Virus record (IMG/VR): IMGVR_UViG_3300042453_005404
Coordinates: 62,001 to 126,000 of that record
Strand: one strand, 5' to 3'
DNA: 64,000 nucleotides
This document shows, in pieces, positions 44,341 to 63,772 of the stretch. Position 1 is the stretch's first letter. Every line of letters begins with the position of its first letter. The notes under the pieces were generated by a model, which was not told where the DNA came from, made no database searches, and was given only the letters and a program-made list of their open reading frames with translations. The translations under genes and the position numbers were made by a program.

Positions 44341-44375
44341 TTTAGATTTTTGCTGTTGTATGATATTCTATATAC
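44341..44375 (+). promoter_or_regulatory. Leaderless sigma70-like promoter
   Basis: TTTAGA-17-TATTCT-6-ATG(44376), TG extended -10. Confidence 0.8.
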
Positions 44376-44582
44376 ATGAAAGCGAAAGAGATGACAAAGA
44401 TCGTGAAAGCAAAAGACCTCCAGCCCGGCGACACCGTGCTTAAGACTCTGGGCCACGTCCTCCTGCGGCGCACCGTGCGTAGCGTGACTCGGCTTGAGGC
44501 CGATCCCACTGCTATAAGGGTGGCATACACTGACCATACCACTATGTTGTGTGACGACAATCACACGGTTACAACAGTCTGA
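44376..44582 (+). CDS. Small beta-barrel hypothetical protein
   Basis: VKAKDLQPGDTV pattern; starts at the promoter-defined ATG. Confidence 0.65.
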   Translation: MKAKEMTKIVKAKDLQPGDTVLKTLGHVLLRRTVRSVTRLEADPTAIRVAYTDHTTMLCDDNHTVTTV

Positions 44583-45043
44583 TGACGAAGACCGTATACA
44601 TTATGATGGGCATCCCCGGCGGCGGCAAGTCAACGTGGATTCGTAACAACGTACCTTCTGATGCAGTGATTTGTTCCGCAGATCACTTCTTCGAAGATGC
44701 CAACGGCAACTATAACTGGAAGGCAGAGCTCTTGTTTCCTGCACACAAGACTTGCTTTCGCAAGTACATCAAGGCACTGGACAATCCGGCTGTACAAAAC
44801 ATCGTGGTGGACAACACCAATACCAAGCGTGCATTCATGCAAGACTATGTGCATGAAGCAAACCTACGTGGTATCGATGTGACGATTGTAACCATTGTTG
44901 CTGATCCGGCTGTTGCCGCTCTCCGTAACGTGCATGGTGTACCTGCCGAAACCGTTAACAAGATGCACAACGAGCTTCTCAACACTTTGCAACTAGGTTT
45001 TAGTTCCGATTGGGGAATCAAGCAGCATATCAAGGTTATTTAA
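44582..45043 (+). CDS. AAA_33 P-loop kinase (PNK kinase-like)
   Basis: GIPGGGKST, ICSAD, VVDNTN, RNVHGVP. Confidence 0.85.
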   Translation: MTKTVYIMMGIPGGGKSTWIRNNVPSDAVICSADHFFEDANGNYNWKAELLFPAHKTCFRKYIKALDNPAVQNIVVDNTNTKRAFMQDYVHEANLRGIDVTIVTIVADPAVAALRNVHGVPAETVNKMHNELLNTLQLGFSSDWGIKQHIKVI

Positions 45044-45064
45044 TTTATGCCGCCGCCTTATTCA

Positions 45065-45280
45065 ATGAAACAAGGTAAGCTATATCGTGTGAGGGCATCA
45101 TTTCCTACTGACGCAGAAGCCTTTAGATTTACCCATCTTGGTGATGTTGTGGTTGCGATTGAAACGATGGAAGATCATAACAACGTTATTTATTGGAAGG
45201 TTCTTACAGCGAACGCAGAGTTGGTAGCAATTGCTGAGAGGAACGTTCAATATTTTCTGGAGGATATGAAAAATGACTGA
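45065..45280 (+). CDS. Divergent SH3-like family member
   Basis: QGKLYRV...VVAIE...WKVLT.N. Confidence 0.55.
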   Translation: MKQGKLYRVRASFPTDAEAFRFTHLGDVVVAIETMEDHNNVIYWKVLTANAELVAIAERNVQYFLEDMKND

Positions 45281-45345
45281 GCCACGAACAGGCAAAGATC
45301 GTTTCTATTTCGCTTGTCACGGTACTTCAAACAAGTAGGAACAGC

Positions 45346-45570
45346 ATGATCGATCATTTGAAACTAGGTATGCTATTCGAATCAAAATGCGATTTCAAAT
45401 GTCTCGCAAGCACAAGTAATACACCAGTTCCACCAGTAGTTACCATTGAAAAAGGAGATCTTTTGGTTTTGATTGATTTCGAGGGTTATGAACATTATAG
45501 GTTTCTAGCCCCTGATGGTTCTACTGTGACAATGTATGGAACTTACAACTTAAAGAAAGTAGAAGAATGA
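45346..45570 (+). CDS. Divergent SH3-like family member
   Basis: LKLGMLF...IEKGDLLVLID...RFLAPDG. Confidence 0.5.
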   Translation: MIDHLKLGMLFESKCDFKCLASTSNTPVPPVVTIEKGDLLVLIDFEGYEHYRFLAPDGSTVTMYGTYNLKKVEE

Positions 45571-45767
45571 TTCATAAAGTATACATCGTTCGTTGTTCGT
45601 ATTGTCAAACTCCATTGTGTGAACCTCACGGTTTGGATCATCGACCCAGATATTTTTATCAACTTGATAGTATTCCACAAGCTATGAGTGAAGCAAACTG
45701 GGGTACAGTAAACGGATTGCAAGTTTGCAATCGTTGCCTAGAACGGCATCAACGATCAGAGTTTTAA
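45567..45767 (+). CDS. Small Zn-finger protein
   Basis: CSYC...CNRC. Confidence 0.55.
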   Translation: MIHKVYIVRCSYCQTPLCEPHGLDHRPRYFYQLDSIPQAMSEANWGTVNGLQVCNRCLERHQRSEF

Positions 45768-45770
45768 ACC

Positions 45771-45805
45771 TTTATATTTAACAAAACATCTGATATCCTA
45801 ACATC
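45771..45805 (+). promoter_or_regulatory. Leaderless sigma70-like promoter
   Basis: TTTATA-17-TATCCT-6-ATG(45806). Confidence 0.7.
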
Positions 45806-46960
45806 ATGGCAAAGATCATCACACATCGTACCCTTTTCACCCGTGATTCTCGTGGTTCCATTCGTACTTGGTACATGGAAACCAAAGGAGATAGCTATCG
45901 TACCGTTTCTGGTATTCTTGATACTCCTAGCTCTGTTGTTACATCAGAATGGACTGTGTGCGCAGGAAAGAATACTGGCCGTGCAAACGCTACAACTCCC
46001 GAGCAACAAGCTCTAAAGGAAGTAGAAAGCCGCTATACCAAGCAGCTTAAAACCGGTTACTTTGAGAATCAAAGCAACGTTGATGTTGCTCAATATGTCG
46101 AACCCATGCTAGCAAAGAGCTACGAAGATTATCGTGGCAAGCTAGACTTTTCTCCCGGTACTTGGTTTCTCAATGTCAAGTACAATGGTCTGCGTATGAT
46201 CGCAACCAAGGATGGACTGTTCACCCGTAAAGGTGAACGTTTCCTTTCAATCCCTCATATCGAAGAATCCCTTAAGCCATTCTTCCAGCAATATCCCAAC
46301 GCTGTTCTGGACGGTGAATGCTTCAACGAGCAGTATCGTCAAGAACTCAACGAGATTGTAAAGCTTGCTCGAAAGACCAAGAAAATCACCAAGGCAGACC
46401 TTGCCGAGAGTGAGCGTCTTATTCGTTATTACGTTTATGACGGTTATGGTTTTACTCCAGAACTAGGAGAAGATGCAGCATATCATAAGCGTAGGCTTTG
46501 GATCAACAGCAACGTTGTCAAGAAGTATGCTTATGTGGAAAAGATCGAGGATTGGCTTGTTAAGGATGAAGCACACATGATGGAGCTTTACAACAACATT
46601 GTGTCCCGTGGCCATGAAGGCGCTATTCTGCGTCTTGTTCGTATGCCTTATGAACACAAACGCAGCAAGAATCTTCTCAAGGTGAAGCCGTTGGAAGATG
46701 CTGAGTTTACGATTACCAACGTTCAAGAGGGTACAGGCAACTGGAGCGGTAAGGCTAAGATCATTTCTTTGCGTGATAGCAATGGCAAAGAGTTTGACGC
46801 TACCTTCAAGGGTACAATGGAAGATGCAGCGTACTTCTTGACCGTCAAGGATCAATGGATTGGCAAGGAAGTAACCGTGCAGTTTAATGGTTATACTGGT
46901 CTTGGTACCCCACAGTTTGCGCAACTAGACTACAAAAACATGGTTAAGGGTGACCGCTAA
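45806..46960 (+). CDS. lig: ATP-dependent DNA ligase
   Basis: EPMLA, KYNGLR (motif I), LDGE, YYVYD, EGAILR, LLKVKP, OB-fold C-terminus. Confidence 0.9.
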   Translation: MAKIITHRTLFTRDSRGSIRTWYMETKGDSYRTVSGILDTPSSVVTSEWTVCAGKNTGRANATTPEQQALKEVESRYTKQLKTGYFENQSNVDVAQYVEPMLAKSYEDYRGKLDFSPGTWFLNVKYNGLRMIATKDGLFTRKGERFLSIPHIEESLKPFFQQYPNAVLDGECFNEQYRQELNEIVKLARKTKKITKADLAESERLIRYYVYDGYGFTPELGEDAAYHKRRLWINSNVVKKYAYVEKIEDWLVKDEAHMMELYNNIVSRGHEGAILRLVRMPYEHKRSKNLLKVKPLEDAEFTITNVQEGTGNWSGKAKIISLRDSNGKEFDATFKGTMEDAAYFLTVKDQWIGKEVTVQFNGYTGLGTPQFAQLDYKNMVKGDR

Positions 46961-47011
46961 ACCCTTGAAATCATAGAGAAAAAACGTTAACAAAAAAAGG
47001 TAAAAAATACC

Positions 47012-47046
47012 TTTAGATATTCGTTAACGTTTGGTATTCTATGAGT
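47012..47046 (+). promoter_or_regulatory. Leaderless sigma70-like promoter
   Basis: TTTAGA-17-TATTCT-6-ATG(47047). Confidence 0.8.
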
Positions 47047-48117
47047 ATGAAGATCGGAATCGAAATCGAGTTCTACAGTCCCAAAAACATCACCGACACC
47101 ATTGCGGCTCTTCGTCGCAAGGTTCGTGGTCTTTCTATTGGTAGCTACGGTAGCTCTGGTTGGAAGATCGTGAGTGATGGTTCTCTTGCAACCATCGATA
47201 GCTTTCACGGCATGGAGCTTGTGTCTCCTGTGCTTGATACCGACAAGGCTGCTAACCTGCGCATGGTTCGCAAGGTGTGCGCTGCGTTGCAAGCTATGGG
47301 TAGCACGGTGAATAACTGCTGCGGTCTGCATGTTCATGTGGATGGTACCGATCTGTCGGTTGAGCAGATTAAGACGATTTTTCATCGCTATACCAAGTTT
47401 GAGGGTATGATCGATCTCATGGTTCCTGCTAATCGGCGTGGTACTAACGTGTACTATACCAAGGGTGGTACCAACATCATCAACAATGTGGAAAACTGTC
47501 AAACCATGAACGCTCTTATGCGTGTGCTGCCTGATCGTTACTACAAGGTGAACCTGTGTGCTCTGGGTCGTCATGGCACGATTGAGTTTCGGCAACACTC
47601 TGGGTCGATCAATGCGGATACCATTCTTAACTGGGTTGAGTTTCTTACTTCGTTTGTCGAAGCTTCCAAGATCACTCCTGCGGCTCCGCAACGTGCTCTT
47701 CGTGGTCGTCCGGCTTCTGGTACGGGCATGGCTGCTGGTTGCCGCAAGGTTTACGATGTGTTCATGGCTTCATACAACAACGGTGGTGGTACCTTGTACC
47801 TTGCCACGATTGCTAACCGTACCGGTCTTGCCATTAACAGCGTAAAGGTTGCAATCTCGACTCTTAAGACCAAGCACGGGATTGTGATTAAGAAGACTGC
47901 TGGACAGCAGCGTGGTGCTACCAACCCGATGTACACGATTGCAAACCCTCATGCGCAGCCTCGTTTGAATCCTGTGCGTTCTACTCGTAGCACTGCCAGT
48001 GCTCCCGCTACTCCTACTGACACGATTTGGCGTGGTGTTAGCAAGACTCTCAAGGCTTACTACGTCGAGCGCATTCAAGAGCTTTCGGGCTTCGGTGTTC
48101 AGAACGTTTCGCTGTGA
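47047..48117 (+). CDS. Putative amidoligase (Amidoligase_2/COOH-NH2 ligase) with C-terminal wHTH-like domain
   Basis: IGIEIEF, WKIVSDGSL, ELVSPVL, CGLHVHV, RYYKVN, TIEFRQHSG. Confidence 0.85.
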   Translation: MKIGIEIEFYSPKNITDTIAALRRKVRGLSIGSYGSSGWKIVSDGSLATIDSFHGMELVSPVLDTDKAANLRMVRKVCAALQAMGSTVNNCCGLHVHVDGTDLSVEQIKTIFHRYTKFEGMIDLMVPANRRGTNVYYTKGGTNIINNVENCQTMNALMRVLPDRYYKVNLCALGRHGTIEFRQHSGSINADTILNWVEFLTSFVEASKITPAAPQRALRGRPASGTGMAAGCRKVYDVFMASYNNGGGTLYLATIANRTGLAINSVKVAISTLKTKHGIVIKKTAGQQRGATNPMYTIANPHAQPRLNPVRSTRSTASAPATPTDTIWRGVSKTLKAYYVERIQELSGFGVQNVSL

Positions 48118-48449: not shown

Positions 48450-48452
48450 GCA

Positions 48453-48767
48453 ATGAACAATCTGCAACTTGGTAAGATGTATTTGGTTAAAGAGTTTTTC
48501 TGGTTTCTTTTTCCAACAAAAGAACTAGCGGAGCGCCAGTGCAGGTGGTCGAGGGCGGGGGCCTCGACATCGGGGGCGACGGGGGTGGCAAAAGTGTTAA
48601 GCCAAAATTTTAAATGCAACATTTTTGTTGTTGAACCAAAGACTTGCTTTGTTTTGCTTGAAGTAGATGATGATTATTACAAGCTTCTTGACTCAAATGG
48701 TAACATTGGTTGGATTTTTAGTTGGGATTTCTCTGGTTGTTTCGAACTTGTAAAGGATTTATGTTGA
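48453..48767 (+). CDS. Hypervariable SH3-like protein A2
   Basis: Same framework; G-rich insert 48528-48587. Confidence 0.85.
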   Translation: MNNLQLGKMYLVKEFFWFLFPTKELAERQCRWSRAGASTSGATGVAKVLSQNFKCNIFVVEPKTCFVLLEVDDDYYKLLDSNGNIGWIFSWDFSGCFELVKDLC

Positions 48768-48798
48768 GAATATTTTCAGAGTATGATATACTTTTGAT
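48764..48798 (+). promoter_or_regulatory. Leaderless sigma70-like promoter (duplicated at 49431)
   Basis: TTGAGA-17-TATACT-6-ATG(48799). Confidence 0.8.
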
Positions 48799-49116
48799 AT
48801 GCTACAAATCGGTAAGATGTATTTGGTTAAAGAGTATTTCTGGTTTCTTTTTCCAACAAAAGAACTGGCGGTGGGGGCGATCGATCGCTTCGAGGGGCGG
48901 GCGTCGCAGGGCTGGGCGGCGACGGGGGCGGTGGTGGCAAAAGTGTTAAGCGAACGTTATAAATGCAACATTTTTGTTGTTGAACCAAAGACTTGCGTTG
49001 TTTTGCTTGAAATGGATGAAACCGAACATTGCTATAAGCTTCTTGATTGTAATGGAAACATTGGTTGGACTCGTTGTTGGAGTTTCGCCTCCTATTTCGA
49101 GCTTGTAAAGGAATAA
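48799..49116 (+). CDS. Hypervariable SH3-like protein A3
   Basis: Same framework; insert 48865-48936 is 57/72 GC. Confidence 0.85.
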   Translation: MLQIGKMYLVKEYFWFLFPTKELAVGAIDRFEGRASQGWAATGAVVAKVLSERYKCNIFVVEPKTCVVLLEMDETEHCYKLLDCNGNIGWTRCWSFASYFELVKE

Positions 49117-49122
49117 GCAACA

Positions 49123-49434
49123 ATGCAACTTGGTAAGATGTATTTGGTTAAAGATTGGTTTTGGTTTCTTTATCCAACAAAAGAACTGGCAAGGACGCCT
49201 GCGGCGAAGGCGAGCAGGGCGATGCGGCCCACGAGGGCGAGGGCGGGGATGGATGCGAAATGGTTGAGCCAAGAATTTAAATGCAACGTTGGTGTTGTTG
49301 AACCAAACACTTGCGTTGTGTTGCTTGAAGTAGATAATGGTTATTTTAAGCTTCTTGATTCGAATGGTAACATTGGTTGGATTATTTGTTGGAATGTCTC
49401 CAAAAATTTCGAACTTGTAAGGGATTTATGTTGA
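49123..49434 (+). CDS. Hypervariable SH3-like protein A4
   Basis: Same framework; insert 49191-49258. Confidence 0.85.
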   Translation: MQLGKMYLVKDWFWFLYPTKELARTPAAKASRAMRPTRARAGMDAKWLSQEFKCNVGVVEPNTCVVLLEVDNGYFKLLDSNGNIGWIICWNVSKNFELVRDLC

Positions 49435-49465
49435 GAATATTTTCAGAGTATGATATACTTTTGAT
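49431..49465 (+). promoter_or_regulatory. Leaderless sigma70-like promoter
   Basis: TTGAGA-17-TATACT-6-ATG(49466). Confidence 0.8.
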
Positions 49466-49711
49466 ATGCTACAAATCGGTAAGATGTATAAAGTTCCGTG
49501 GTATGTTGAAGCTGACGAGTACATAGCTGGACGACTGATTGAGCGAATCAAACTAAAAGATGGCGATCTTGTTGTTGTTGTTAGCATGGAAGAATACCGT
49601 ATGGGCGGGGAGATTCGTTGGGACACAAAACTGCTGACAGGTGACGGAAGACTTGTATACGTTTCGATATCGCAACCGGGGTCTGCATACTGGAAAAAAG
49701 CACATGAATAG
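49466..49711 (+). CDS. Divergent SH3-like family member
   Basis: MLQIGKMY...LKDGDLVVVV...KLLTGDG. Confidence 0.7.
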   Translation: MLQIGKMYKVPWYVEADEYIAGRLIERIKLKDGDLVVVVSMEEYRMGGEIRWDTKLLTGDGRLVYVSISQPGSAYWKKAHE

Positions 49712-50003: not shown

Positions 50004-50017
50004 AACTTAGTTAATCC

Positions 50018-50052
50018 TTTAGATATTCATATTCTTATGGTATTCTATATAT
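50018..50052 (+). promoter_or_regulatory. Leaderless sigma70-like promoter
   Basis: TTTAGA-17-TATTCT-6-ATG(50053). Confidence 0.8.
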
Positions 50053-50427
50053 ATGAAGCAGAAGAAGGCTGTTGTTCGTCGCAAAGGTTCGGTTTCCAGC
50101 AAAGTCAAACAACTGGATTGGATCATGCAGTTTATCATTCGCATGAATCCTTGTGCGATTTGTGGTGGTTCCTTGGCTGATGGGTACAATCCTCGTTATC
50201 CGGGTAAAAGCATCACGCTGCATCATTCCATCGGAAGCCGTGAAGTTGACGATTGGGAGAATCTGGAGTATGTAGCTGGTATGGTGCTGTGTCATTCTAC
50301 ATGCCACAAGAGCTATCATTTGAAGCGCAGACACATGGATGCGGGCAAGGATGTAAACGAGGGCGAGGTTGCGATCATGGAAAGCAATATTGCCAAGGTT
50401 GTGAAGAAGCAGAGGAAAGTAAAATGA
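50053..50427 (+). CDS. HNH endonuclease-like protein
   Basis: CAICG...TLHH...LCH..CH..YH. Confidence 0.7.
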   Translation: MKQKKAVVRRKGSVSSKVKQLDWIMQFIIRMNPCAICGGSLADGYNPRYPGKSITLHHSIGSREVDDWENLEYVAGMVLCHSTCHKSYHLKRRHMDAGKDVNEGEVAIMESNIAKVVKKQRKVK

Positions 50428-50642: not shown

Positions 50643-50656
50643 GAGAACGTAAAACA

Positions 50657-51321: not shown

Positions 51322-51323
51322 AG

Positions 51324-51486: not shown

Positions 51487-51828
51487 ATGATAAAAATATT
51501 GACAGGTGCCGAGCTAGTTCCCGGCAAAATGTATACTATTTGGGGGCGTTTGAATCGTGATACGTGGCCCGCATATCATCAACGACCAACTCTTCAATCA
51601 CCATCAACTGTTGCAACTGTTGCTCCATTGTTTCCATTGGAGCCATTTGTGTTTTTAGAACGCACGCCAAGTGAGTTTAGATGGAATGAAACCGATCCAA
51701 TGTATGACTACAAAATATTGACTTGTGACGGCGTTGTGGGCTGGCTATGCTTTCATGACGATGATTTGTCTGCTTTGGGTATTGGTTTTCGTGAATATGA
51801 TCCAAAAGACTTTGAAGTAAACCTTTAA
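51487..51828 (+). CDS. Divergent SH3-like family member
   Basis: LVPGKMY...FVFLE...KILTCDGVVGWL. Confidence 0.7.
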   Translation: MIKILTGAELVPGKMYTIWGRLNRDTWPAYHQRPTLQSPSTVATVAPLFPLEPFVFLERTPSEFRWNETDPMYDYKILTCDGVVGWLCFHDDDLSALGIGFREYDPKDFEVNL

Positions 51829-51868
51829 ATCGTAGCAACAACTTGATATACTAAAACTAGTTAAACCT

Positions 51869-51979
51869 ATGAGCATTCAAAGCATAATTTCTGCCACAGT
51901 GTTTGCAAGTGTTTTCTTTTTGTGGATATTCACTTGTCCAATGATAACACACAAAAAGTGTTGCTGTTGTAAAAACTAA
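51869..51979 (+). CDS. Small membrane peptide with Cys-rich tail (36 aa)
   Basis: Hydrophobic helix then KKCCCCKN; promoter TTTAAA(51824)-17-TATACT upstream. Confidence 0.4.
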   Translation: MSIQSIISATVFASVFFLWIFTCPMITHKKCCCCKN

Positions 51980-51995
51980 CAAAAGGAAGCAAATC

Positions 51996-52193: not shown

Positions 52194-52328
52194 ACGTTTA
52201 TGACTTTCCGCCATGAGCTTTATGTTGTTTTTTGGATTGTTGTTGTTTTGTACGCATATGCGTTAGGTTTCGCACTCGCAAAATGCTAATATGCCTTGAT
52301 TACAAGCACAAACAAAAAATAAAATACC

Positions 52329-52363
52329 TTTAGATGTTCATGAACATATGATATTCTATATGC
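52329..52363 (+). promoter_or_regulatory. Leaderless sigma70-like promoter
   Basis: TTTAGA-17-TATTCT-6-ATG(52364). Confidence 0.8.
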
Positions 52364-53503
52364 ATGATGAACGTTCACCCGGCTCTTCGTTTCTCGTTTG
52401 ACCATCTTCGCACGGCTCTTATGACCCGTGTGGATTCTGGTGCAATCAACATCACTCGCAAGGGTTCTCTGGCCCTTTTCAACTATTCCAAGGATTGTCA
52501 GTTTGAGCATCTTTGGGATGATTATACCATCATGGCCCGTGGTCTTATTCTCGACATGGAGAATGAGTCTATTGTGGCTCTTCCTTTTCCCAAGTTCTTC
52601 AATGCGTCGGAGAAGGAGGGTGCTAGTGTTGTCAAGTTTGATGCTCCCTTTGATGCGTATACCAAGATGGACGGATCGCTGGGTATCGTGTATTTCCACA
52701 ATGGTTCATGGCACGTTGCAACCCGTGGTTCGTTTACGTCCGAACAGTCTGTGTGGGCAGAGAAGTGGCTGCACGATAACCTCAAGCCTTATCACCAGCT
52801 TGATCAGAATGTGACATATCTTTGTGAGATTATCTATGACAGCAACCGTATTGTTATCAACTACCCTTTTGAGGGTTTGGTGATGCTTGGTGCTTATAAC
52901 CGTGTTACCGGCATTGAGCTTGACTATGATCGTGATTTGCGTCCGTTGTGTGAGCGTATCGGTATGATGCTTGCAGAGCGTCACCAGTTCACTTCATTTG
53001 TTGCTGCACAGGAGTTTGTCAAGACTCTTCCCGGCAACGAGGAAGGTTTCGTTATTCGTTTTCGGGATTCTGGCGAGCGTGTAAAGCTCAAGGGTTCTGA
53101 ATATTGCTCTTTGCACAAGATGATTAGCAACATTACTCCTTTGGCTATCTGGGAGCTTTTGTGTGCGGGTTACTCCATTGAAGATTACAAGAAGGCTTTG
53201 CCGGAAGAGTTTTGGGATGAGGTTGACGAGATTGTTGGTCATTTCCAGCGTCGTGCTGCTTGTGTTATGCTGGATGTTGTGAACCTTTATTCCGAGGTTT
53301 CTGATTTGTCTGACAAGGATCTTGGTTTGAAGCTGGCTGGCGAGTTCAAGCGTCGTGAGAATGCTTCGTTGCTGTTCCCTTATCGTAAGAAGGGAACGGC
53401 TTTGGTTCACGGTTTGGTGATGAAGTCTTTGCGGCCTACTGGAAACGTGATTGAGGGATATGTGCCGTCTGCCATGCTCCAGCGTTCTCAGTCGGAGGAA
53501 TGA
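52364..53503 (+). CDS. RNA ligase (T4 Rnl1-like)
   Basis: ARGLI...PFPKFFN, KMDGSLG, ATRGSF, EGFVI, VKLKG.EY. Confidence 0.9.
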   Translation: MMNVHPALRFSFDHLRTALMTRVDSGAINITRKGSLALFNYSKDCQFEHLWDDYTIMARGLILDMENESIVALPFPKFFNASEKEGASVVKFDAPFDAYTKMDGSLGIVYFHNGSWHVATRGSFTSEQSVWAEKWLHDNLKPYHQLDQNVTYLCEIIYDSNRIVINYPFEGLVMLGAYNRVTGIELDYDRDLRPLCERIGMMLAERHQFTSFVAAQEFVKTLPGNEEGFVIRFRDSGERVKLKGSEYCSLHKMISNITPLAIWELLCAGYSIEDYKKALPEEFWDEVDEIVGHFQRRAACVMLDVVNLYSEVSDLSDKDLGLKLAGEFKRRENASLLFPYRKKGTALVHGLVMKSLRPTGNVIEGYVPSAMLQRSQSEE

Positions 53504-53505
53504 TC

Positions 53506-54994: not shown

Positions 54995-55026
54995 AATCCA
55001 GCGGTTTAAGAAAAAGCAATAATACG

Positions 55027-55061
55027 TTTAGATATTCGTGAACGTATGCTATTCTAAAAGC
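55027..55061 (+). promoter_or_regulatory. Leaderless sigma70-like promoter
   Basis: TTTAGA-17-TATTCT-6-ATG(55062). Confidence 0.8.
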
Positions 55062-55256
55062 ATGAAGAACAACACGGTTTCTGCTCGTCGTCTCGCTCGT
55101 TCGATGGAGTCTAGCGTCAAGCTTATCGCTCGCAAGTTTGCACGCTTGAACGAAGCACAGCGTCTTCGTGCAATGCAGATTATTGCGAACATGGATGATC
55201 TTAGGTCGTTTGAGTCCATCGTTCGTAACTCGTTTGTGTGCAACACGGAGCTCTGA
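55062..55256 (+). CDS. Hypothetical protein
   Basis: Start defined by promoter geometry (MKNNTV). Confidence 0.6.
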   Translation: MKNNTVSARRLARSMESSVKLIARKFARLNEAQRLRAMQIIANMDDLRSFESIVRNSFVCNTEL

Positions 55257-55259
55257 AAC

Positions 55260-55741: not shown

Positions 55742-55747
55742 GCAACA

Positions 55748-56047: not shown

Positions 56048-56051
56048 AGCA

Positions 56052-56351: not shown

Positions 56352-56355
56352 AGCA

Positions 56356-56688
56356 ATGCAACTTGGTAAGATGTATTTGGTTAAAGAGTATTGTTGGTTT
56401 CTTTATCCAACAAAAGAACTGGCCTCGACGACGGGGCCACGGTGGTCGAGCGTGAGGCGGTGGCCCTCCGACGAGGAGCGCACGGTGGCTTATCGAGATG
56501 CAAAATGGTTGAGCCAAGCATTTAAATGCAACGTTGGTGTTGTTGAACCAAAAACTAGTTTTGTCTTGCTTGAACAAGACAAGGATCATTTCAAGGTTCT
56601 TGATTCAAACGGAAACATTGGTTGGATTCGTAGCGATGATTTTTCGAAAAATTTCAAGGTTTTGAATGAAAAGAAGAATAACCTTTAG
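56356..56688 (+). CDS. Hypervariable SH3-like protein A11
   Basis: Start at MQLGKMY (56356); insert from 56419. Confidence 0.85.
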   Translation: MQLGKMYLVKEYCWFLYPTKELASTTGPRWSSVRRWPSDEERTVAYRDAKWLSQAFKCNVGVVEPKTSFVLLEQDKDHFKVLDSNGNIGWIRSDDFSKNFKVLNEKKNNL

Positions 56689-56718
56689 ATATGTCAAATA
56701 TTTTGGTATTATAGAAGT
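56684..56718 (+). promoter_or_regulatory. Leaderless sigma70-like promoter
   Basis: TTTAGA-17-TATTAT-6-ATG(56719). Confidence 0.8.
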
Positions 56719-57477
56719 ATGAAGCGAACGATTGTAATCGGTGATGTACATGGTTGCCTTGCAGAGCTCAAGGAGCTTGTTGACGAGGTTGGATATGTTC
56801 GTGGTGAGGATCGATTGATTCTTGCTGGTGATCTTGTGGATCGTGGTGTAGATTCTGCTGGAGTTGTTCGTTATGCAATGAAGATTGGTGCCGAGGCTGT
56901 TTGCGGCAATCATGACAACAAGCTTTTGCGTCGTTCCAAGCACCTTGCACGGCAGCGTAGCAATCCCGCATACGTCAACCCGATGAAGCCTTGCGAAGAC
57001 CAAGAAAACACTCTTGCGAGTCTTGGTGATGCAGAGTTGGCGTGGCTTGGATCTTTGCCTTATCATATCAAGCTTGACGAGTTTAACGCTGTTGTGGCTC
57101 ATGCTGGCATTGTTCCCGGTGTTCCTCTTGTTCGTCAACGTGATGAAGCGTTTATGATGGTTCGTTACGTTGATAAGGATAACGGCAAGATGAAGCATAT
57201 GGTTATGCCGGGATATCTTCGTCCAGAAAACAGTGATTACTGGGCAGATAAGTTTGACAGCAGCTTTGATGTTATCTTTGGCCACAACGTTGTTGGATTG
57301 AAGGATATCAAGGTTTGGGAAAACACTAACGGTGGTCGTTGCTTTGGTATCGATACTGGTTGTGTGTTTGGAGGACGCTTGAGCGCCCTTGTTATGCAAG
57401 CTCGCAGCAAGCCTTATGAGGTTATTCAAGTACAAGCACACAAGCAACACTGCGTTTCTGATCTATTTTCAGAGTGA
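56719..57477 (+). CDS. Metallophosphoesterase (ApaH/PrpA/Pnkp-phosphatase-like)
   Basis: GDVHG, GDLVDRG, GNHD, HAG, FGH, DTGC. Confidence 0.9.
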   Translation: MKRTIVIGDVHGCLAELKELVDEVGYVRGEDRLILAGDLVDRGVDSAGVVRYAMKIGAEAVCGNHDNKLLRRSKHLARQRSNPAYVNPMKPCEDQENTLASLGDAELAWLGSLPYHIKLDEFNAVVAHAGIVPGVPLVRQRDEAFMMVRYVDKDNGKMKHMVMPGYLRPENSDYWADKFDSSFDVIFGHNVVGLKDIKVWENTNGGRCFGIDTGCVFGGRLSALVMQARSKPYEVIQVQAHKQHCVSDLFSE

Positions 57478-57489
57478 AAAGAGCATAAT

Positions 57490-58148: not shown

Positions 58149-58161
58149 AAAGAAGACGACT

Positions 58162-59364
58162 ATGAGCGAACGTTATCAGATTATAATCAAGGCTGGGGAG
58201 CATACTTTTCATTTCAAAACCAAGACAAGGGTTGGGGAGTTTTGGAACTTCTCAGAGGAGATGAAGGAGCATATTGATTGGGAGCAGATGGCTATTGGAT
58301 TGGACAAAAAGACCAAGGAAGTTTTGGACTCTGTGAGTTGTCCTAAGTGTAAGTCTAGCACACAGGAAACATTTATGGAGGGTCAGTATCTTGTTCCTTC
58401 TAGTGACAGGGATGCTATTATCAAGGCTTGCACTAAATGTCAGTGGTCTAGGTTGGAGCGACTATGAGTGATATAAAGTTTCCAGTTGTATCAAAAGAAA
58501 TTATTGACAAAGTTTTTACTTCTGATGATGGATGGACTACTGTATATGAGGGTCCAACCATCGTAAGCAGTGCAAGTATTATGCCACAGATTTATGTGCC
58601 GCTTCAAGTTTCTCATATATTCAAGAAGGAAGATAAAGAATGAAACGCTATTATGCCAAGGCTGACACATGGTTCAAGGAAGGAACGGAAGCGTTTAGAG
58701 AAGAAGAGATGTTTCCTTATGGTAGTTTGACTGATGGTGAAACTGGAGAGAAAACGGGCTCAGCGATTTATCGTGGGATTTACGTTATTGGATCTGGTGG
58801 CAGCTATCTTGATAAATCATACAAAGAAGGGGAAGAAGTTGAGATGCGAGAACATTGCTCGGACGATGAGTTTCTTGTGGTAGAGGAATAGGTTATGGGA
58901 ATAAATGGGGATACCAAGGATATTGGTTGGATTCAATGTAGCCAATGTGGGTGGGGTTGTGAAGTACATCGTTCAGAAGTTGAGATTGGGGATTATGTAG
59001 ATCGGCAATCATGTCCTGATTGTGGTCTTGGGCCATGTGAGATTGATTGGGATTATCCAGATGGTAAGGGTTGGGTAGCAGAAAAAGTTTGACTTATTGA
59101 TAATGGTATGATAGTTTAAACCTATCGAAAGCAAAGGAAAATATGAAAGCAACGTTTAAGTCATTTGTCGAAGGCGAGAAGCGATTCATTGTAGTAGGTG
59201 AGCCTCATGTATATCAGAATGGATTCCTTGTCACTTGTATTGATACAAGCACTGGAGAAACCGAAAGCAAAACTATCGCAAGCTCTGAGAGACTTGATCT
59301 ATGTGAGTTCGAACTAAAATGCCTTGGTAAAGTTGTTTGGGAAAAGAAGCTTATCCCAGTATGA
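58162..59364 (+). CDS. Run of five small hypothetical proteins (58162-58467 Zn-ribbon, 58464-58643, 58640-58891, 58895-59092 Zn-ribbon, 59143-59364)
   Basis: Coupled ORFs; CxxC pairs in two; 58464-58643 read manually. Confidence 0.55.
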
Positions 59365-60665: not shown

Positions 60666-60925
60666 GGATTCTTCAAGGTGCAACAGCCGTAGATGTTAAC
60701 GATGTGATACTGGATATAGGTGGATTATATCATTATCCATACAGCGTATGTCTTCGTGAAAACGATTGCAAAGCACACGGCTCAGTTGTTGATCAATACA
60801 CTCCATTTGTTGTATTAGAGTTTATTGAAGGGCTTTCCGGCAAGTATCTAAGAATTCTTACCACAACTGGAGAGATTGGTCTTGTACAATACAACTCAAG
60901 ATACTTGAAGCAGATTGAGAAGTAA
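60662..60925 (+). CDS. Divergent SH3-like family member
   Basis: IGGLYHY...FVVLEF...RILTTTGEIGLV; GTG start. Confidence 0.6.
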   Translation: MRILQGATAVDVNDVILDIGGLYHYPYSVCLRENDCKAHGSVVDQYTPFVVLEFIEGLSGKYLRILTTTGEIGLVQYNSRYLKQIEK

Positions 60926-60929
60926 TATC

Positions 60930-60964
60930 TTGATATTCAGATTAACGTTTGCTATACTGTATTC
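60930..60964 (+). promoter_or_regulatory. Leaderless sigma70-like promoter
   Basis: TTGATA-17-TATACT-6-ATG(60965). Confidence 0.8.
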
Positions 60965-61552
60965 ATGAACAATCAAGTTATGAACTATCTTGCTCTCGAT
61001 CTAGAACTCAACACCAACGAACTTGGCAACACAACCAAAATCATTCAAGTTGGCGTGGCCTTTGGTAGCAATGTTTCTAACATTGAAACTCGTAAATGGT
61101 ATGTTGATCCAAAAGAGCCGCTGTCAACACATATCATTGGTCTAACAGGTATCACACAAGAAGATATTGACACCAAAGCTGTTCCTCTATCACAAGTTGC
61201 AGCCGAGCTTGGTCAAATCATTGAAGCTAATCAAACGTTTGTGAATCCTATTCAATGGGGTGGTGGAGACGATCAAGAACTCAAAGCCGAGTTTGAAGAA
61301 AACGGCATCGAGTTTCGCTGCTTCGGACATAGAGCTATTGACGTGAAAACGCTTTTTGTGTTTCTCCAGATGGCCAAGGGGAACAGTTGGAAGGGTGGAC
61401 TACGAGCTTGTATGAGCAAGTATAAGCTTGACTTCAAGGGTGAACCACACCGAGCAGACGTTGATGCTTACAACACGCTTGTATTCTACTTTGAACTAAT
61501 GAAACGTCAAGCTAAGATTGAAGAAATGATTAGGACGGCTAAAGAACTATGA
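60965..61552 (+). CDS. DEDDh 3'-5' exonuclease
   Basis: LDLEL, IIQVG, LTGIT, D..L, H.A.VDA. Confidence 0.85.
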   Translation: MNNQVMNYLALDLELNTNELGNTTKIIQVGVAFGSNVSNIETRKWYVDPKEPLSTHIIGLTGITQEDIDTKAVPLSQVAAELGQIIEANQTFVNPIQWGGGDDQELKAEFEENGIEFRCFGHRAIDVKTLFVFLQMAKGNSWKGGLRACMSKYKLDFKGEPHRADVDAYNTLVFYFELMKRQAKIEEMIRTAKEL

Positions 61553-62890
61553 GGCGCAAGACTGCAACAACCAAGAAGATTCCTCGCCTAACTTCTGTTG
61601 AAGAGGCGATGGAAGTTGTATCAGATTATCTAAACACTGAACGTTTTAGGGCTGATCCATACGCAGAGGATGTGACACCAGAGCAGCTACGTGGATTGAT
61701 TGAGCGTATCTGGGCTGATGCATATGCGGAGGGAGTAGCCAGTGGATATGAGCAAGGTTTGGGTGAGAGTGATGAATAATAGTTTGAGATTCCAAAAACC
61801 GTATGATATTCTTTATATGTGGCAGTCAAATGAGAAGCTTGACGCTGGTGAAAGGACAAGGATAAAGTGATGCTAAAGAACACATGGACTCCAGAAGATG
61901 TTATTTCAGAAATGAAGGTTGGCATTCGTGAGTTTGGTCGTTATACATTTTCGGACAAGGGACCAGAAGAGGTTATGGATATTCACAGTATTGCTAAATA
62001 TCTTGTAACGCTACCTACCGAAGCTGTTTATGGTTTTATCAAGGAGCTTCGTGGTAAGACTAAGATCAACTCTGATAGGGAGCGAGTGGCACGAAGTTTG
62101 CTTGTAGCGATTGATACAGGCCCTTGGACAGAACAAGAGTTTCTTCATATCTGTGAAGCTTCTCCCGGCAGCTACTGAGGATAGAATCATGAAAACGTTT
62201 ACGATTCGTTATGAGTTGAATGTAGATCTAACCGAGAATGAGCTTTATCCAGATGGAACGGATGGAGTTGGAGAGGTTACACCGAAAAAGGTAGCTGCTC
62301 TTATTCAGAGTTCTGGAGGGATGAAGGAAGTTCTGAAAGAATGGGATCTATATCCTTATGGTGTTCTAACTGTTACAGAGAAGAAATGATATCATGAAAA
62401 AGATGGACATTTATCACTTCGTTGATGAAGTTTCTAGTCTCGCAAGAGACTTCGCTCATTATGAGCAAGACACATATCCAGCAGAAGATGTTCGTATGAC
62501 CTTCGCTGAGTGGCTTCCATTGCTTTTGAAGTTTATGGATGAACAGGTTGAAGATGCTGGTGGACTAACCGCTACTTCTCCAGAGTTCAAGGAGTTTCTA
62601 AAGACTGTGAAGCCTTGGAATGGACGTATGCCGGGAGGGTGGCGATGAAGCGTTATTTATTGATTGCTGGATATTATTATTATCCTAAAGGTGGAACAGC
62701 CGATTGGGTTGGTTGTTTTGAAACCTGTGAAGAGGCAGAAGCAAAAGTTGTAAGAACTCAAGAACATGAGTTATTTAGCCGTGGGCCTCGTAAGGGACAG
62801 ATTAAATCAACCAGCGAATATTATTCTGTTGACGGTAGTAAGCGTGATTGGTATGAAGTGATTGATCTGATGGAATGGATGGAACGGTAG
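61549..62890 (+). CDS. Run of five small hypothetical proteins (61549-61779, 61867-62178, 62189-62389, 62394-62648, 62645-62890)
   Basis: Co-directional coupled ORFs; promoter TTGAGA(61784)-17-TATTCT inside the run. Confidence 0.55.
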
Positions 62891-62984
62891 TCTAATGTTC
62901 AACACATCAAAAGACGAGTTTTACACTCTTATTATCAACGAAGAAGACTTCAAAAACCCCTAAATATCCAGCAAAAAGAATATC

Positions 62985-63019
62985 TTTACTTCTCTGGGGC
63001 AGGGTGATATACTGTTTCC
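62985..63019 (+). promoter_or_regulatory. Leaderless sigma70-like promoter
   Basis: TTTACT-17-TATACT-6-ATG(63020). Confidence 0.8.
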
Positions 63020-63199
63020 ATGAAGAACGAAGAAGTGGATCTTCTGTTGGAGTCCATTCGTAAGAATCTGGAAGAGATTGCTATGGTTGAGCCTGACCTG
63101 CGTTCTTATCGGGATTGGAAGACTCGTTTGGAGTGTCTTGCTGAGTCCTTGGATAGGGATCTGCGGCAAGCAAAGCGTTGGGCGTCTTTCAAGGAATAA
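63020..63199 (+). CDS. Hypothetical protein (59 aa, not in the ORF track)
   Basis: MKNEEVDLLLESIRKN...; start fixed by promoter geometry. Confidence 0.65.
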   Translation: MKNEEVDLLLESIRKNLEEIAMVEPDLRSYRDWKTRLECLAESLDRDLRQAKRWASFKE

Positions 63200-63203
63200 T
63201 CCC

Positions 63204-63238
63204 TTTACTTCTCTTCTCCAGTAAGATAGAGTAGAAAC
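63204..63238 (+). promoter_or_regulatory. Leaderless sigma70-like promoter
   Basis: TTTACT-17-TAGAGT-6-ATG(63239). Confidence 0.75.
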
Positions 63239-63733
63239 ATGACTAACATTGACACTCTGTTCTCGTTTGCCTTGAACAAGCTTACGGCAGACCGTGAGCG
63301 GCTCAATAGCCTTCTTGAAAAGCAGAAGGGGACCGATATCGGTCGTTTCATGGAGAGGGCTCTGGAATGGCGTACAGAGGCTTCCAAGATGCAACTTCTG
63401 TGGGAGCTCTTTCATGAAGTGATTGATATGTCTGATCTTGGGTTTATTGGGAGTTTTGTGAAGTTTGTAGTAAACGACCTTCTCGACGACGGTGCCTTTA
63501 GGGTTGAGTGGCGCAAGGCTTTTCTTGACGAAAACAAGCGTCTTGTTTGGCTTGGTGGGGATTTCAAGACTGTTTTGACGGACAAGGATGATCCCAAGGC
63601 TGAACCTGTTGTTGTTTACGATGTTGACGAGGGAACGCAGGATGTTGCTTTGTTGATGGAGGCTATGGATCACAAGGAGTGGGAAGTTTTGCAGCGGCAA
63701 GAACTTGAAGCTTCTTGCCAAGATGCGGAATAA
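63239..63733 (+). CDS. Hypothetical protein
   Basis: Promoter-defined start. Confidence 0.7.
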   Translation: MTNIDTLFSFALNKLTADRERLNSLLEKQKGTDIGRFMERALEWRTEASKMQLLWELFHEVIDMSDLGFIGSFVKFVVNDLLDDGAFRVEWRKAFLDENKRLVWLGGDFKTVLTDKDDPKAEPVVVYDVDEGTQDVALLMEAMDHKEWEVLQRQELEASCQDAE

Positions 63734-63737
63734 TCTT

Positions 63738-63772
63738 TTTACTTCCAAGTGATGTTGTGGTAGAGTAAAACC
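63738..63772 (+). promoter_or_regulatory. Leaderless sigma70-like promoter
   Basis: TTTACT-17-TAGAGT-6-ATG(63773); another TTTACT at 63977 is truncated by the window edge. Confidence 0.75.

What the first reader, a model, noticed from the sequence alone, without database searches (positions are those of the whole stretch)
44341..63772. At least 12 stereotyped sigma70-type promoters placed exactly 6 nt before ATG: systematic leaderless early genes
Seen: -35 (TTTAGA, TTTATA, TTGAGA, TTGATA or TTTACT), a 17-nt spacer, -10 (TATTCT, TATACT, TATCCT, TATTAT or TAGAGT, often TG-extended), then exactly 6 nt and ATG at 44376, 45806, 47047, 48799, 49466, 50053, 52364, 55062, 56719, 60965, 63020, 63239 and 63773. 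None has a Shine-Dalgarno, whereas structural genes often have AAGGA or AGGAG. Established: sigma70 starts about 7 nt after the -10 box, which here is the A of ATG. Inference: early genes are leaderless. This could keep them translated when mRNA leaders or 16S anti-SD are attacked, and it hints at a host lineage rich in leaderless mRNAs. The geometry also revealed ORFs missing from the track (63020, 44291).
Basis: partly seen in the sequence, partly recalled or inferred. Interest (0 to 1): 0.7.

Follow-up and report, generated by a model that had tools for sequence, protein, structure and literature searches.

The report
Leaderless early-gene promoters in a jumbo phage
A 260-kb freshwater phage places about thirty near-identical bacterial-type promoters exactly six bases before the ATG of its replication and early-region genes, so these messages should start at the start codon with no ribosome-binding leader; this is a known trick, here used on an unusual scale and kept across a whole group of uncultured phages.

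Summary
All 13 sites are as described. In the whole 260,466-bp phage contig a loose -35/17/-10 pattern has ATG exactly 6 nt after the -10 box 34 times, against 1-6 at any other offset. No site with an ORF of 40 aa or more lies at offset 4, 5, 7 or 8. The 29 good sites share an A/T-rich block, CC, TTTAGA, a 17-nt spacer, TGnTATTCT, a pyrimidine at -1 (29/29), then ATG.

They head genes for the DnaE polymerase, DNA ligase, two RNA ligases, a phosphatase and many small ORFs. Domain and paralog alignments begin at these ATGs. Structural genes use Shine-Dalgarno leaders instead.

The same design appears in six related metagenomic contigs (GC 36-54%). More distant relatives and Microcystis phage Mel-JY01 lack it.

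About a third of same-class promoters have short SD-bearing leaders or drive tRNAs, so "systematic" means a majority, not all.

No transcript 5' ends could be obtained. "Early" timing, the host and the "anti-SD attack" rationale remain inference, and the last is poorly supported.

Verdict: a new member of a known kind (leaderless phage mRNAs, as in Thermus phage phiYS40 and actinophages). Moderate interest.

The parts
44332..44378 (+). Promoter (TTTAGA-17-TGATATTCT-6) abutting the ATG at 44376; 68-aa ORF 44376-44582
   Evidence: PWM 32.3
45762..45808 (+). Promoter (TTTATA-17-TGATATCCT-6) abutting the ATG at 45806; ATP-dependent DNA ligase 45806-46960
   Evidence: The ortholog is leaderless in L064, L068, L065 and L078.
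47003..47049 (+). Best-scoring promoter (CCTTTAGATATTC...TGGTATTCT-6) abutting the ATG at 47047; amidoligase 47047-48117
   Evidence: PWM 43.2. Pfam Amidoligase_2 begins at residue 2. A near-identical promoter heads the L068 and L078 orthologs.
48755..48801 (+). Promoter (TTGAGA-17-TGATATACT-6) abutting the ATG at 48799; 105-aa member of the MQLGKMY paralog family. The upstream gene's TGA stop lies inside the -35 box.
49422..49468 (+). Duplicate of the 48799 promoter, abutting the ATG at 49466; 81-aa paralog
50009..50055 (+). Promoter (CCTTTAGATATTC...TGGTATTCT-6) abutting the ATG at 50053; 124-aa ORF
   Evidence: Orthologs are leaderless in L064, L065 and L078.
52320..52366 (+). Promoter abutting the ATG at 52364; T4 Rnl1-type RNA ligase 52364-53503
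   Evidence: The L064 and L078 orthologs are leaderless. A relative's contig keeps the boxes and the 17-nt spacing although its spacer sequence differs.
55018..55064 (+). Promoter abutting the ATG at 55062; 64-aa ORF
   Evidence: PWM 40.9. The L064 and L078 orthologs are leaderless.
56675..56721 (+). Promoter (TTTAGA-17-TGGTATTAT-6) abutting the ATG at 56719; metallophosphatase 56719-57477. The upstream TAG stop lies inside the -35 box.
   Evidence: (Metallophos from residue 3). Homology to L064 and L078 starts exactly at this ATG.
60921..60967 (+). Promoter (TTGATA-17-TGCTATACT-6) abutting the ATG at 60965; 195-aa ORF
62976..63022 (+). Promoter of the TTTACT subclass (TTTACT-17-TGATATACT-6) abutting the ATG at 63020; 59-aa ORF 63020-63199
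63195..63241 (+). Promoter of the TTTACT subclass (-10 box TAGAGT, no TG) abutting the ATG at 63239; 164-aa ORF
63729..63775 (+). Promoter of the TTTACT subclass (TGGTAGAGT) abutting the ATG at 63773; 66-aa ORF. Two more of this subclass follow just beyond the window, at genome 126012 and 126267.
39735..39795 (+). Same-class promoter with a short leader. The predicted +1 at 39779 begins AGGAG, and the ATG is at 39793.
51815..51871 (+). Same-class promoter (TTTAAA-17-TGATATACT). Predicted +1 at 39779-style geometry is A at 51859; first ATG 10 nt downstream.
59080..59145 (+). Same-class promoter with a 19-nt SD-bearing leader (+1 at 59124, AAAGGAAAAT, ATG at 59143)
61775..61869 (+). Same-class promoter whose +1 (61819) is the G of a 4-codon GTG frame. 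It is probably leadered, serving GTG 61867 behind GAAAGGACAAGGA.
44289..44335 (-). Weak divergent candidate: TTTAAA-17-TGTAAT-6-ATG with a 31-aa hydrophobic ORF
   Evidence: It is not found by the pattern or PWM scans.

Best explanation
These sites are a family of about 45 promoters for a sigma70-family holoenzyme, most probably the host's RNA polymerase with its primary sigma factor. Each has an A/T-rich upstream block, CC, a -35 box TTTAGA (or TTGAGA, TTTACT), a 17-nt spacer, and an extended -10 box TGnTATTCT.

In 27-31 of them the -10 box ends exactly 6 nt before an ATG. Transcription then starts on the A of the start codon and gives a leaderless mRNA. Its 5'-terminal AUG would be bound directly by the ribosome, without Shine-Dalgarno pairing.

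Each such promoter heads a short operon. Its first gene is leaderless and the following genes are SD-led or overlap the preceding stop. The genes served are replication, repair and nucleotide genes and many small ORFs of the variable region, that is, an early or middle programme. Virion genes use leaders with SD and a different, TATATAT-like upstream motif.

The promoter often fills the whole gap between genes, and the upstream stop codon can sit inside the -35 box. The design is therefore also the most compact way to give a gene its own promoter.

Shown: the motif, its exact spacing, its statistics, its conservation, and the N-termini.
Inferred: the transcription start point, the polymerase and sigma factor used, the timing, and the mode of ribosome binding.
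For: Spacing and statistics. There are no sites at offset 4, 5, 7 or 8 with an ORF of 40 aa or more.

Promoter anatomy beyond what the search pattern demanded: TG at -15/-14 in 27-28 of 29 sites, CC at -37/-36, an A/T block at -44 to -38, and no purine at -1. The pyrimidine at -1 holds in 29/29 sites, against 57% of SD-led starts, and in 24/24 sites in relatives. This is the classic Y(-1)/R(+1) start-site context.

Same-class promoters without an ATG also put an A after a pyrimidine at the same distance. They open AGAAAG... leaders or sit 15-18 nt before tRNA clusters.

The start codon at +1 is ATG in 27 sites and GTG in only 2, neither convincing.

N-termini: Pfam and PHROG matches start at residues 1-3 of the amidoligase, phosphatase, DnaE polymerase, QueC-like protein, Rnl2-like ligase and endonuclease. 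Seven paralogs share the N-terminus MQLGKMY whether they are SD-led (5 copies) or promoter-abutted (2 copies).

SD use: 46% of ordinary starts, 9% of leaderless starts, 8% of random positions.

Conservation: the same +6 peak appears in L064, L068, L065, L076, L077 and L078, whose ligases are 56-92% identical and whose GC is 36-54%. The ligase, amidoligase, Rnl1, orf124 and orf64 orthologs are leaderless there.

No multisubunit RNA polymerase gene was found. The only sigma-like ORF has region 2 but no region 4, so it cannot read a -35 box.

Precedent for the geometry: a -10 motif 6-7 bp before ORFs gives leaderless mRNAs in Deinococcus-Thermus (PMC12340547).
Against: No 5'-end data exist. The runs labelled RNA that hold the phage are probably DNA. 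The three true metatranscriptomes hold only a relative's Rnl1 region, as contigs that continue upstream through the promoter. That fits read-through transcription or DNA carry-over.

Intrinsic terminators are not enriched between the operons (20 found, 16.1 expected), so read-through transcripts must exist.

The -35 box TTTAGA and -10 box TATTCT differ from TTGACA and TATAAT. The conserved block from -44 to -25 is longer than a plain -35 element, so a phage factor may take part.

The contig is about 70% complete by CheckV, so missing genes cannot be excluded. The search for a T7-type polymerase had no working control.

The 5' ends of the leaderless messages are no less structured than other coding starts.
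Confidence: 0.8

Rival explanations
1. The promoters are real, but they are read by host polymerase re-programmed by a phage factor (an activator or sigma appropriator bound at the extended -44 to -25 block), or by a phage sigma. They would then be middle rather than immediate-early promoters. The messages would still be leaderless.
For: The conserved block AATAnCC-TTTAGA-TATTC is longer than a -35 hexamer, and the hexamers deviate from TTGACA and TATAAT. The genes served (polymerase, ligases, nucleases) are middle genes in many phages. There are two promoter subclasses, TTTAGA/TATTCT and TTTACT/TAGAGT. The phage encodes a sigma70 region-2 protein.
Against: The 17-nt spacer plus TG-extended -10 box is the standard primary-sigma layout. 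The phage sigma lacks region 4 and fits the single-box TATATAT motif of the SD-led genes better. One relative (L077) uses canonical TTGACA in the same layout.
Confidence: 0.25
2. The promoters are real, but most translation of these genes comes from longer read-through transcripts. The exact abutment to ATG would then reflect genome compaction or cassette structure rather than a leaderless translation mode.
For: There is no terminator enrichment. RNA contigs of a relative span the promoter. Upstream stop codons lie 30-41 nt before 16 of the 29 ATGs, so the promoter simply fills the gap between genes.
Against: On a read-through transcript these ATGs have no SD (9%) and no overlap with the upstream stop, so they would be poorly translated. 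Compaction alone does not predict zero sites at 5 or 7 nt, the invariant pyrimidine at -1, or ATG rather than GTG or TTG. TTG and GTG make up 21% of SD-led starts.
Confidence: 0.1
3. The repeated 45-nt unit is mainly a recombination module, like the PeSL promoter-terminator cassettes of T4-type phages. Its conservation would reflect cassette shuffling more than selection on expression.
For: The amidoligase promoter is nearly identical in G000 and L068, while the proteins are 66% identical. 5 of 30 synteny break ends against L078 and L064 fall on a promoter or its ATG, against 0.93 expected (P about 0.003). The promoters lie in a region of many small variable ORFs. PeSL precedent: PMC2839356, PMC4122927.
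Against: There is no stem-loop or terminator partner. Spacer sequences differ freely between copies while the boxes and distances are fixed, which is the signature of selection for promoter function. The apparent recombinant ends at 50015 and 50047 were only cross-mapping of the 67595 promoter. This reading adds to the promoter explanation and does not replace it.
Confidence: 0.05
4. The pattern is chance, or an artefact of ORF or start-codon choice.
For: A generic E. coli-consensus scan finds no excess of promoter-like sites in the region (42 found, 36.4 expected).
Against: (P about 1e-21). The control in unrelated viral contigs gave 0/52. The design is conserved in relatives.
Confidence: 0.01

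Closest known systems
Thermus thermophilus phage phiYS40 (leaderless middle and late transcripts)
   Same: It is a large lytic myovirus in which most transcripts of a temporal class begin at the start codon and are translated by the host without SD (as summarised in PMC3594737; the primary paper is recalled from memory).
   Different: In phiYS40 the leaderless class is middle/late, and the host belongs to a phylum where leaderless genes are the rule. Infection there is reported to raise IF2 and lower IF3. In the present phage the class looks early or middle, the promoters have a strong -35 box, the virion genes are SD-led, the host is an unknown freshwater mesophile, and no initiation-factor gene was found.
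-10 motif adjacent to ORFs in Deinococcus-Thermus (PMC12340547)
   Same: A TAnnnT box 6-7 bp before the start codon gives leaderless mRNA. The motif also allows mis-annotated starts to be corrected.
   Different: Those promoters mostly lack a -35 element and are cellular. Here a conserved -35 box, a 17-nt spacer and a TG extension are all present, and the distance is strictly 6.
SigA-like promoters of actinobacteriophages predicted to give leaderless mRNAs (Cluster O mycobacteriophages, PMC4351075)
   Same: [quoted passage not shown]
   Different: There are only a few per genome (3 of about 8 promoters), in siphoviruses of a known leaderless-rich host. Here there are about 30 per genome in a T4-superfamily jumbo phage.
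T4-type early promoters and PeSL cassettes (PMC2839356, PMC4122927)
   Same: Many stereotyped strong sigma70 promoters, with an A/T-rich upstream part, a TTTAC-like -35 box and a TG-extended -10 box (from memory), scattered through variable regions of small ORFs in phages with gp23-type capsids. A link to indel boundaries is possible.
   Different: T4 early messages have leaders with SD, and PeSLs include a stem-loop terminator. Here there is no leader and no terminator partner.
Lambda cI from PRM and other single leaderless phage genes
   Same: A 5'-terminal AUG made by a sigma70 promoter.
   Different: Those are isolated regulatory genes, weakly translated in E. coli. They are not the main expression mode of a gene class.
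Jumbo phages with mapped transcription start sites (phiKZ, AR9)
   Same: Large genomes with stereotyped early promoters.
   Different: phiKZ has no leaderless transcript (PMC8244752) and AR9 leaders are 26-491 nt (PMC5312081). Both use phage polymerases.

Membership tests
Sigma70-family -35/-10 promoters (extended -10 class) | -10 hexamer TAnnnT | tested here: met
   T at -12, A at -11 and T at -7 were demanded by the pattern. The consensus is TATTCT, with T at -10 in 22/29 sites and C at -8 in 20/29.
Sigma70-family -35/-10 promoters (extended -10 class) | TG one base upstream of the -10 hexamer | tested here: met
   T at -15 in 28/29 and G at -14 in 27/29 sites. The pattern used to collect the sites did not demand this.
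Sigma70-family -35/-10 promoters (extended -10 class) | -35 hexamer related to TTGACA at 17 +/- 1 nt | tested here: met
   TTTAGA, TTGAGA, TTTACT or TTGACT, with a spacer of 17 nt at every site. Spacers of 15, 16, 18 and 19 show no ATG peak. The relative L077 has TTGACA itself.
Sigma70-family -35/-10 promoters (extended -10 class) | Initiation by a sigma70 holoenzyme about 7 nt after the -10 box | not testable with these tools
   Only the sequence context is available: pyrimidine at -1 and A at +1 in 29/29 sites. The RNA contigs were uninformative.
Leaderless mRNAs | Transcript 5' end coincides with the start codon | tested here: inconclusive
   The geometry predicts it. No read-level RNA data could be had, and the contigs of runs X27-X29 run through the promoter of a relative.
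Leaderless mRNAs | No Shine-Dalgarno sequence serving that start codon | tested here: met
   The 6 nt before the ATG are promoter discriminator. An SD-like core is found at 9% of these starts, against 46% of ordinary starts and 8% of random positions.
Leaderless mRNAs | The AUG at the 5' end is the real N-terminus | tested here: met
   Domain matches begin at residues 1-3. Ortholog alignments begin at residues 1-6. The paralog family has the same N-terminus behind either an SD or the promoter.
Leaderless mRNAs | AUG rather than GUG or UUG | tested here: met
   Of class promoters found without demanding a start codon, 27 have ATG at +1, 2 have GTG (one a 4-codon frame) and 0 have TTG. Among SD-led starts 21% are TTG or GTG.
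T4-type PeSL cassettes | Early promoter joined to a stem-loop terminator | tested here: not met
   Terminator-like hairpins are not enriched (20 found, 16.1 expected), and none sits next to the promoters.
T4-type PeSL cassettes | Indel boundaries between close relatives coincide with the motif | tested here: inconclusive
   5 of 30 HSP ends fall on a promoter or ATG, against 0.93 expected. Only two relatives were compared.
Deinococcus-Thermus / phiYS40-type -10-only leaderless promoters | -10 box 6-7 nt before the ORF without a -35 element | tested here: not met
   The distance is met (6 nt), but a strongly conserved -35 box is present.

The most novel reading that the evidence does not exclude
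A whole clade of abundant freshwater jumbo phages splits its gene expression by mode of translation initiation. The early and replication programme would run almost entirely on 5'-terminal-AUG (70S-type) initiation from promoter-ATG cassettes, and the virion programme on SD leaders. This would give the phage a translational switch, perhaps coupled to changes it makes in initiation factors or ribosomes. The cassettes would also serve as the units of gene gain and loss in the variable region.
Probability: 0.2. Interest if true: 0.7.

Novelty: new member of a known kind. Interest (0 to 1): 0.45.

Why it matters
The motif gives a simple rule (promoter box plus 6 nt) that fixes the true start codons of about 30 genes per genome. 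Public gene calls for relatives get some of these starts wrong.

It defines the early or middle regulon of an uncultured, widespread lake phage group without any culture. It also narrows the host: a bacterium that uses SD, so not Bacteroidota, yet must translate leaderless messages well enough for a phage to trust its DNA polymerase and ligase to them.

If confirmed, this would be the first T4-superfamily or jumbo phage lineage known to rely on leaderless messages for a whole gene class. It would also be a natural system for comparing SD-led and leaderless initiation of the same protein family, through the MQLGKMY paralogs.

Tried and rejected
- RNA evidence. Runs X19, X20 and X25, labelled RNA-Seq, behave as DNA. 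The metatranscriptomes X27-X29 hold only contigs of a relative's Rnl1 region and gave no 5' ends.
- Apparent recombinant ends at 50015 and 50047. These turned out to be the 67595 locus cross-mapping on the near-identical promoter core, so they are not used as evidence.
- Close relatives by DNA. There was no megablast match in the phage collection, and the ligase peptide scan of IMG/VR found nothing. The promoter-core scan of IMG/VR gave 52 chance singletons. The 21-base promoter pattern gave nothing in genome contigs or metagenome contigs. The ligase profile found no relative in GTDB genomes. Relatives came only through the search for homologous proteins plus look-up of encoding contigs.
- Host. 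There are only weak leads to Actinomycetota: the best phage hits of Rnl1 and DnaE are actinophages and Firmicutes phages, and the RecA atlas neighbours are actinobacterial. The structural genes point elsewhere, to Microcystis phage Mel-JY01, Flavobacterium phage immuto and Rhodothermus phage RM378. Mel-JY01 has no +6 peak.
- The generic E. coli-consensus promoter scan is blind to this class.
- The folding energy of the first 40 nt does not differ between leaderless and SD-led genes.
- No phage IF3, S21 or multisubunit polymerase gene was found in the 260 kb available. The T7-type polymerase search had no positive control.

Full report
**What the window is**

The window is bases 62001-126000 of a single 260,466-bp contig with 40.2% GC. 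IMG/VR lists it as a linear virus record, about 70% complete by CheckV. Many lake, reservoir, river and aquaculture metagenomes hold it nearly identically.

It is a myovirus with a gp23-type capsid protein, a portal, two sheath-like proteins and baseplate wedge proteins. Its replication set includes a DnaE-type polymerase, DnaB, RecA, ribonucleotide reductase, an ATP-dependent DNA ligase and two RNA ligases. It carries 13 tRNAs.

Its nearest cultured structural relatives share only 28-43% identity: Microcystis phage Mel-JY01, Flavobacterium phage immuto and Rhodothermus phage RM378.

**The observation**

Every one of the 13 listed ATGs is preceded by TT[TG]ANN, 17 nt, TANNNT and exactly 6 nt.

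- In window 44300-64000, 13 of the 23 matches to this loose pattern have ATG at +6. Simulated sequence gives a mean of 0.19 and a maximum of 2 in 200 runs.
- Over the whole contig there are 197 matches, 34 with ATG at +6, against 1-6 at every other offset. Other spacer lengths show no peak. P is about 1e-21.
- After five chance-looking hits with tiny ORFs are removed, 29 sites remain.
- No site with an ORF of 40 aa or more has the ATG at offset 4, 5, 7 or 8.
- A pattern with the TG extension and no ATG requirement finds 57 sites, where 7-17 are expected. Of these, 27 have ATG at +6.
- In unrelated viral contigs, 52 matches to the promoter core have none.

**Anatomy**

The 29 sites share much more than the pattern demanded:
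- an A/T-only stretch at -44 to -38;
- C at -36 (23/29) and C or T at -37;
- TTTAGA at -35 to -30;
- a preference for TATTC just after it;
- a spacer of free sequence;
- T at -15 (28/29) and G at -14 (27/29);
- TATTCT at -12 to -7;
- never a purine at -1.

A pyrimidine at -1 followed by A at +1, seven bases after the -10 hexamer, is the standard start-site context of sigma70 holoenzymes (established knowledge). SD-led genes of this phage have a pyrimidine at -1 in only 57% of cases.

A subclass around 63020-64267 has TTTACT or TTGACT as the -35 box and TAGAGT, TATACT or TAGGAT as the -10 box.

**Not all promoters of the class are leaderless**

A weight matrix covering -44 to -7 finds 47 sites above 12 bits, against 1-4 in shuffled sequence. 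About a dozen good ones have no ATG at +1. Some begin AGAAAG-type purine-rich leaders of 14-25 nt that end in an SD and an ATG or GTG (genome 18029-, 52427+, 219159-, 220114-, 132213+; window 39779 and 59124). Others lie 15-18 nt before tRNA clusters (genome 155554- and 157049-).

These sites matter for two reasons. They show the motif works as a promoter independently of an ORF. They also keep the same pyrimidine/A junction at the same distance, which supports the assumed +1. So roughly 60-70% of the class is leaderless.

**Is the ATG the real start?**

- All 29 ATGs open ORFs of 54-1227 aa.
- Family matches begin at residues 1-3 for Amidoligase_2, Metallophos, the DnaE polymerase, the QueC-like protein, the Rnl2-like ligase and an endonuclease.
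- Ortholog alignments begin at residues 1-6.
- A family of seven small paralogs (48453, 48799, 49123, 49466, 53818, 54145, 54454) gives an internal control. Five copies start behind AAGGAATAAGCAACA-ATG and two behind the promoter-6-ATG. The N-termini (MQLGKMY, MLQIGKMY) coincide.
- At +1 the codon is ATG in 27 sites and GTG in two doubtful ones. By contrast 21% of SD-led starts are TTG or GTG. This fits the known preference of leaderless initiation for AUG.
- The second codon is AAG or AAA in 45% of leaderless genes, against 16% of SD-led genes (P = 0.002).

**Contrast with the rest of the genome**

An SD-like core lies 4-12 nt before 46% of longest-ORF starts, 8% of random positions and 9% of the leaderless ATGs. 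Ten SD-led genes, several of them structural, have a TATATAT or TATAAATA box 23-49 nt upstream. This recalls T4 late promoters (from memory).

The phage encodes a 259-aa protein with sigma70 region 2 but no region 4, which would suit such one-box promoters. That assignment is inference. No multisubunit RNA polymerase was found. The -35/-10 promoters are therefore most simply read by the host holoenzyme.

**Compaction**

In 16 of the 29 cases the stop codon of the preceding ORF lies 30-41 nt before the ATG. It sits inside the -35 hexamer (TGA in TTGAGA, TAG in TTTAGA) or in the AATAAT block just upstream. Part of the 'UP-like' conservation is thus the TAA of the previous gene, and the intergenic space is nothing but the promoter. 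Downstream genes in each unit overlap the previous stop or have an SD.

**Conservation**

The ligase has a graded series of homologs in metagenomes. Contigs with ligases 92, 83, 79, 62, 61 and 56% identical (L078, L064, L068, L076, L065, L077), with GC from 36 to 54%, show the same +6 peak. All 24 strict sites in them have a pyrimidine at -1.

The ligase gene itself is leaderless in G000, L078, L064, L068 and L065. The amidoligase, Rnl1, orf124 and orf64 orthologs are leaderless in the relatives that have them. L077 uses canonical TTGACA as its -35 box. A relative seen in a metatranscriptome keeps TTTAGA, the 17-nt distance and TGATATTCT before Rnl1, although its spacer sequence is entirely different.

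Contigs with ligases 55-58% identical but a different gene order (L066, L069, L070, L071), and Mel-JY01, have no peak. The trait therefore marks a clade and is not universal among T4-like phages.

Public gene calls miss it. The L064 ligase is called from an ATG inside the -10 box, and the L078 amidoligase from an ATG 57 nt downstream.

**What could not be shown**

No transcript 5' ends were obtained. The temporal class is inferred from gene content.

The host is unknown. Clear SD use argues against Bacteroidota (established knowledge: they largely lack SD). Weak leads point to Actinomycetota: the Rnl1 and DnaE hits are to actinophages, and the RecA atlas neighbours are actinobacterial. However, the structural genes point to phages of cyanobacteria and Bacteroidota, and no WhiB was found.

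The suggestion that leaderless messages guard against attack on leaders or the anti-SD is not supported, because the phage's own virion genes need SD pairing.

**Comparison with what is known**

The mechanism, a promoter abutting the start codon so that the mRNA has no leader, is well known:
- lambda cI;
- phiYS40, where most middle and late messages are leaderless (PMC3594737);
- Deinococcus-Thermus, with a -10 box 6-7 bp before about a third of ORFs (PMC12340547);
- predicted leaderless SigA promoters in Cluster O mycobacteriophages (PMC4351075).

Jumbo phages with mapped start sites have none (phiKZ, PMC8244752; AR9, PMC5312081). My searches of the open literature found no report for cyanophages or T4-type phages.

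The stereotyped promoters in a variable region recall T4 early promoters and PeSL cassettes (PMC2839356, PMC4122927). Five of 30 synteny break ends against two relatives fall on a promoter or its ATG. However, there is no terminator partner, and the sample is small.

**Verdict**

The feature is real, strongly non-random and conserved. It is best explained as host-type promoters that make leaderless first-gene messages for the early and replication programme of a clade of freshwater jumbo phages.

It is a new member of a known kind. It is useful for annotation and as a lead to the host, and it would be moderately surprising to specialists because of its scale and lineage.

Noticed in passing
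window 48114-49711 and 53818-54750: There are seven or eight paralogous genes of about 100 aa (N-terminus MQLGKMY) in two tandem arrays with a period of about 320 nt. Some are SD-led and two are leaderless. The first array has 2-10 times the depth of its flanks in lake metagenomes, and its copy number differs between strains: the relative L078 has one copy where G000 has five.
   Followed up: partly
window 44366, 50011, 52346, 56719 (against L078 and L064): Blocks of homology with two relatives begin or end on a promoter edge, or exactly at the leaderless ATG (5 of 30 ends, 0.93 expected). For example, about 1.25 kb of small ORFs plus the promoter is present before the phosphatase ATG in G000 but absent in L078. 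This suggests promoter-bounded cassettes are gained and lost, like T4 PeSLs.
   Followed up: partly
genome 84775, 163915, 168827, 171994, 174235, 244674 (+) and 251600, 234935, 214708, 196445 (-); window 22775 for the first: A TATATAT or TATAAATA box lies 23-49 nt before SD-led, partly structural genes. It is a candidate late promoter.
   Followed up: partly
genome 162693-163472 (-), = L067:1102-1881: A 259-aa ORF has sigma70 region 2 only and no region 4. It is possibly the late sigma factor. It lies in an operon behind a 142-aa ORF whose upstream region has TTGACT and TATAGT 20 nt apart.
   Followed up: partly
L064:10001-11170 and L078:11298-12314: Public gene calls for relatives misplace the starts of leaderless genes. 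The ligase is called 15 nt too far upstream, from an ATG inside the -10 box. The amidoligase is called 57 nt too far downstream.
   Followed up: yes
genome 155285-157034 (-) and 172722-173210 (-): Thirteen tRNA genes lie in two clusters. Promoters of the same class sit 15-18 nt before tRNA-Ile(tat) and tRNA-Leu(caa).
   Followed up: partly
L003:2133-3902 (genome 42133-43902): A bacterial-type RecA of 589 aa carries an intein-like insert (weak Intein_splicing match at residues 291-327). Its nearest cellular atlas clusters are actinobacterial RecA proteins, many with inteins.
   Followed up: no
L010:15655-18420 (genome 235655-238420): A 921-aa protein combines an ATPase part with matches to terminase-large-subunit, DnaC and primase families and a C-terminal PhoH domain.
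   Followed up: no
L009:5991-7562 and L009:7678-10710: Two adjacent genes both match tail-sheath families. The second is twice as long (1010 aa).
   Followed up: no
window 44985-45567: A co-occurring strain, 3-5% diverged (runs X19, X20), has 57 other letters in place of these 581 bases, which hold small ORFs.
   Followed up: no
L077:19362 and L077:21022: A more distant relative (GC 36%) has two identical promoter-ATG units with a canonical TTGACA -35 box, heading duplicated ORFs. One ORF is followed by a pentapeptide-repeat protein. L068 also encodes a pentapeptide-repeat protein.
   Followed up: no
window 47041-47049: The longest-ORF rule picks an ATG (47041) that lies inside the discriminator, two codons before the leaderless ATG. 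ORF lists therefore give 358 aa instead of 356 aa for the amidoligase.
   Followed up: yes
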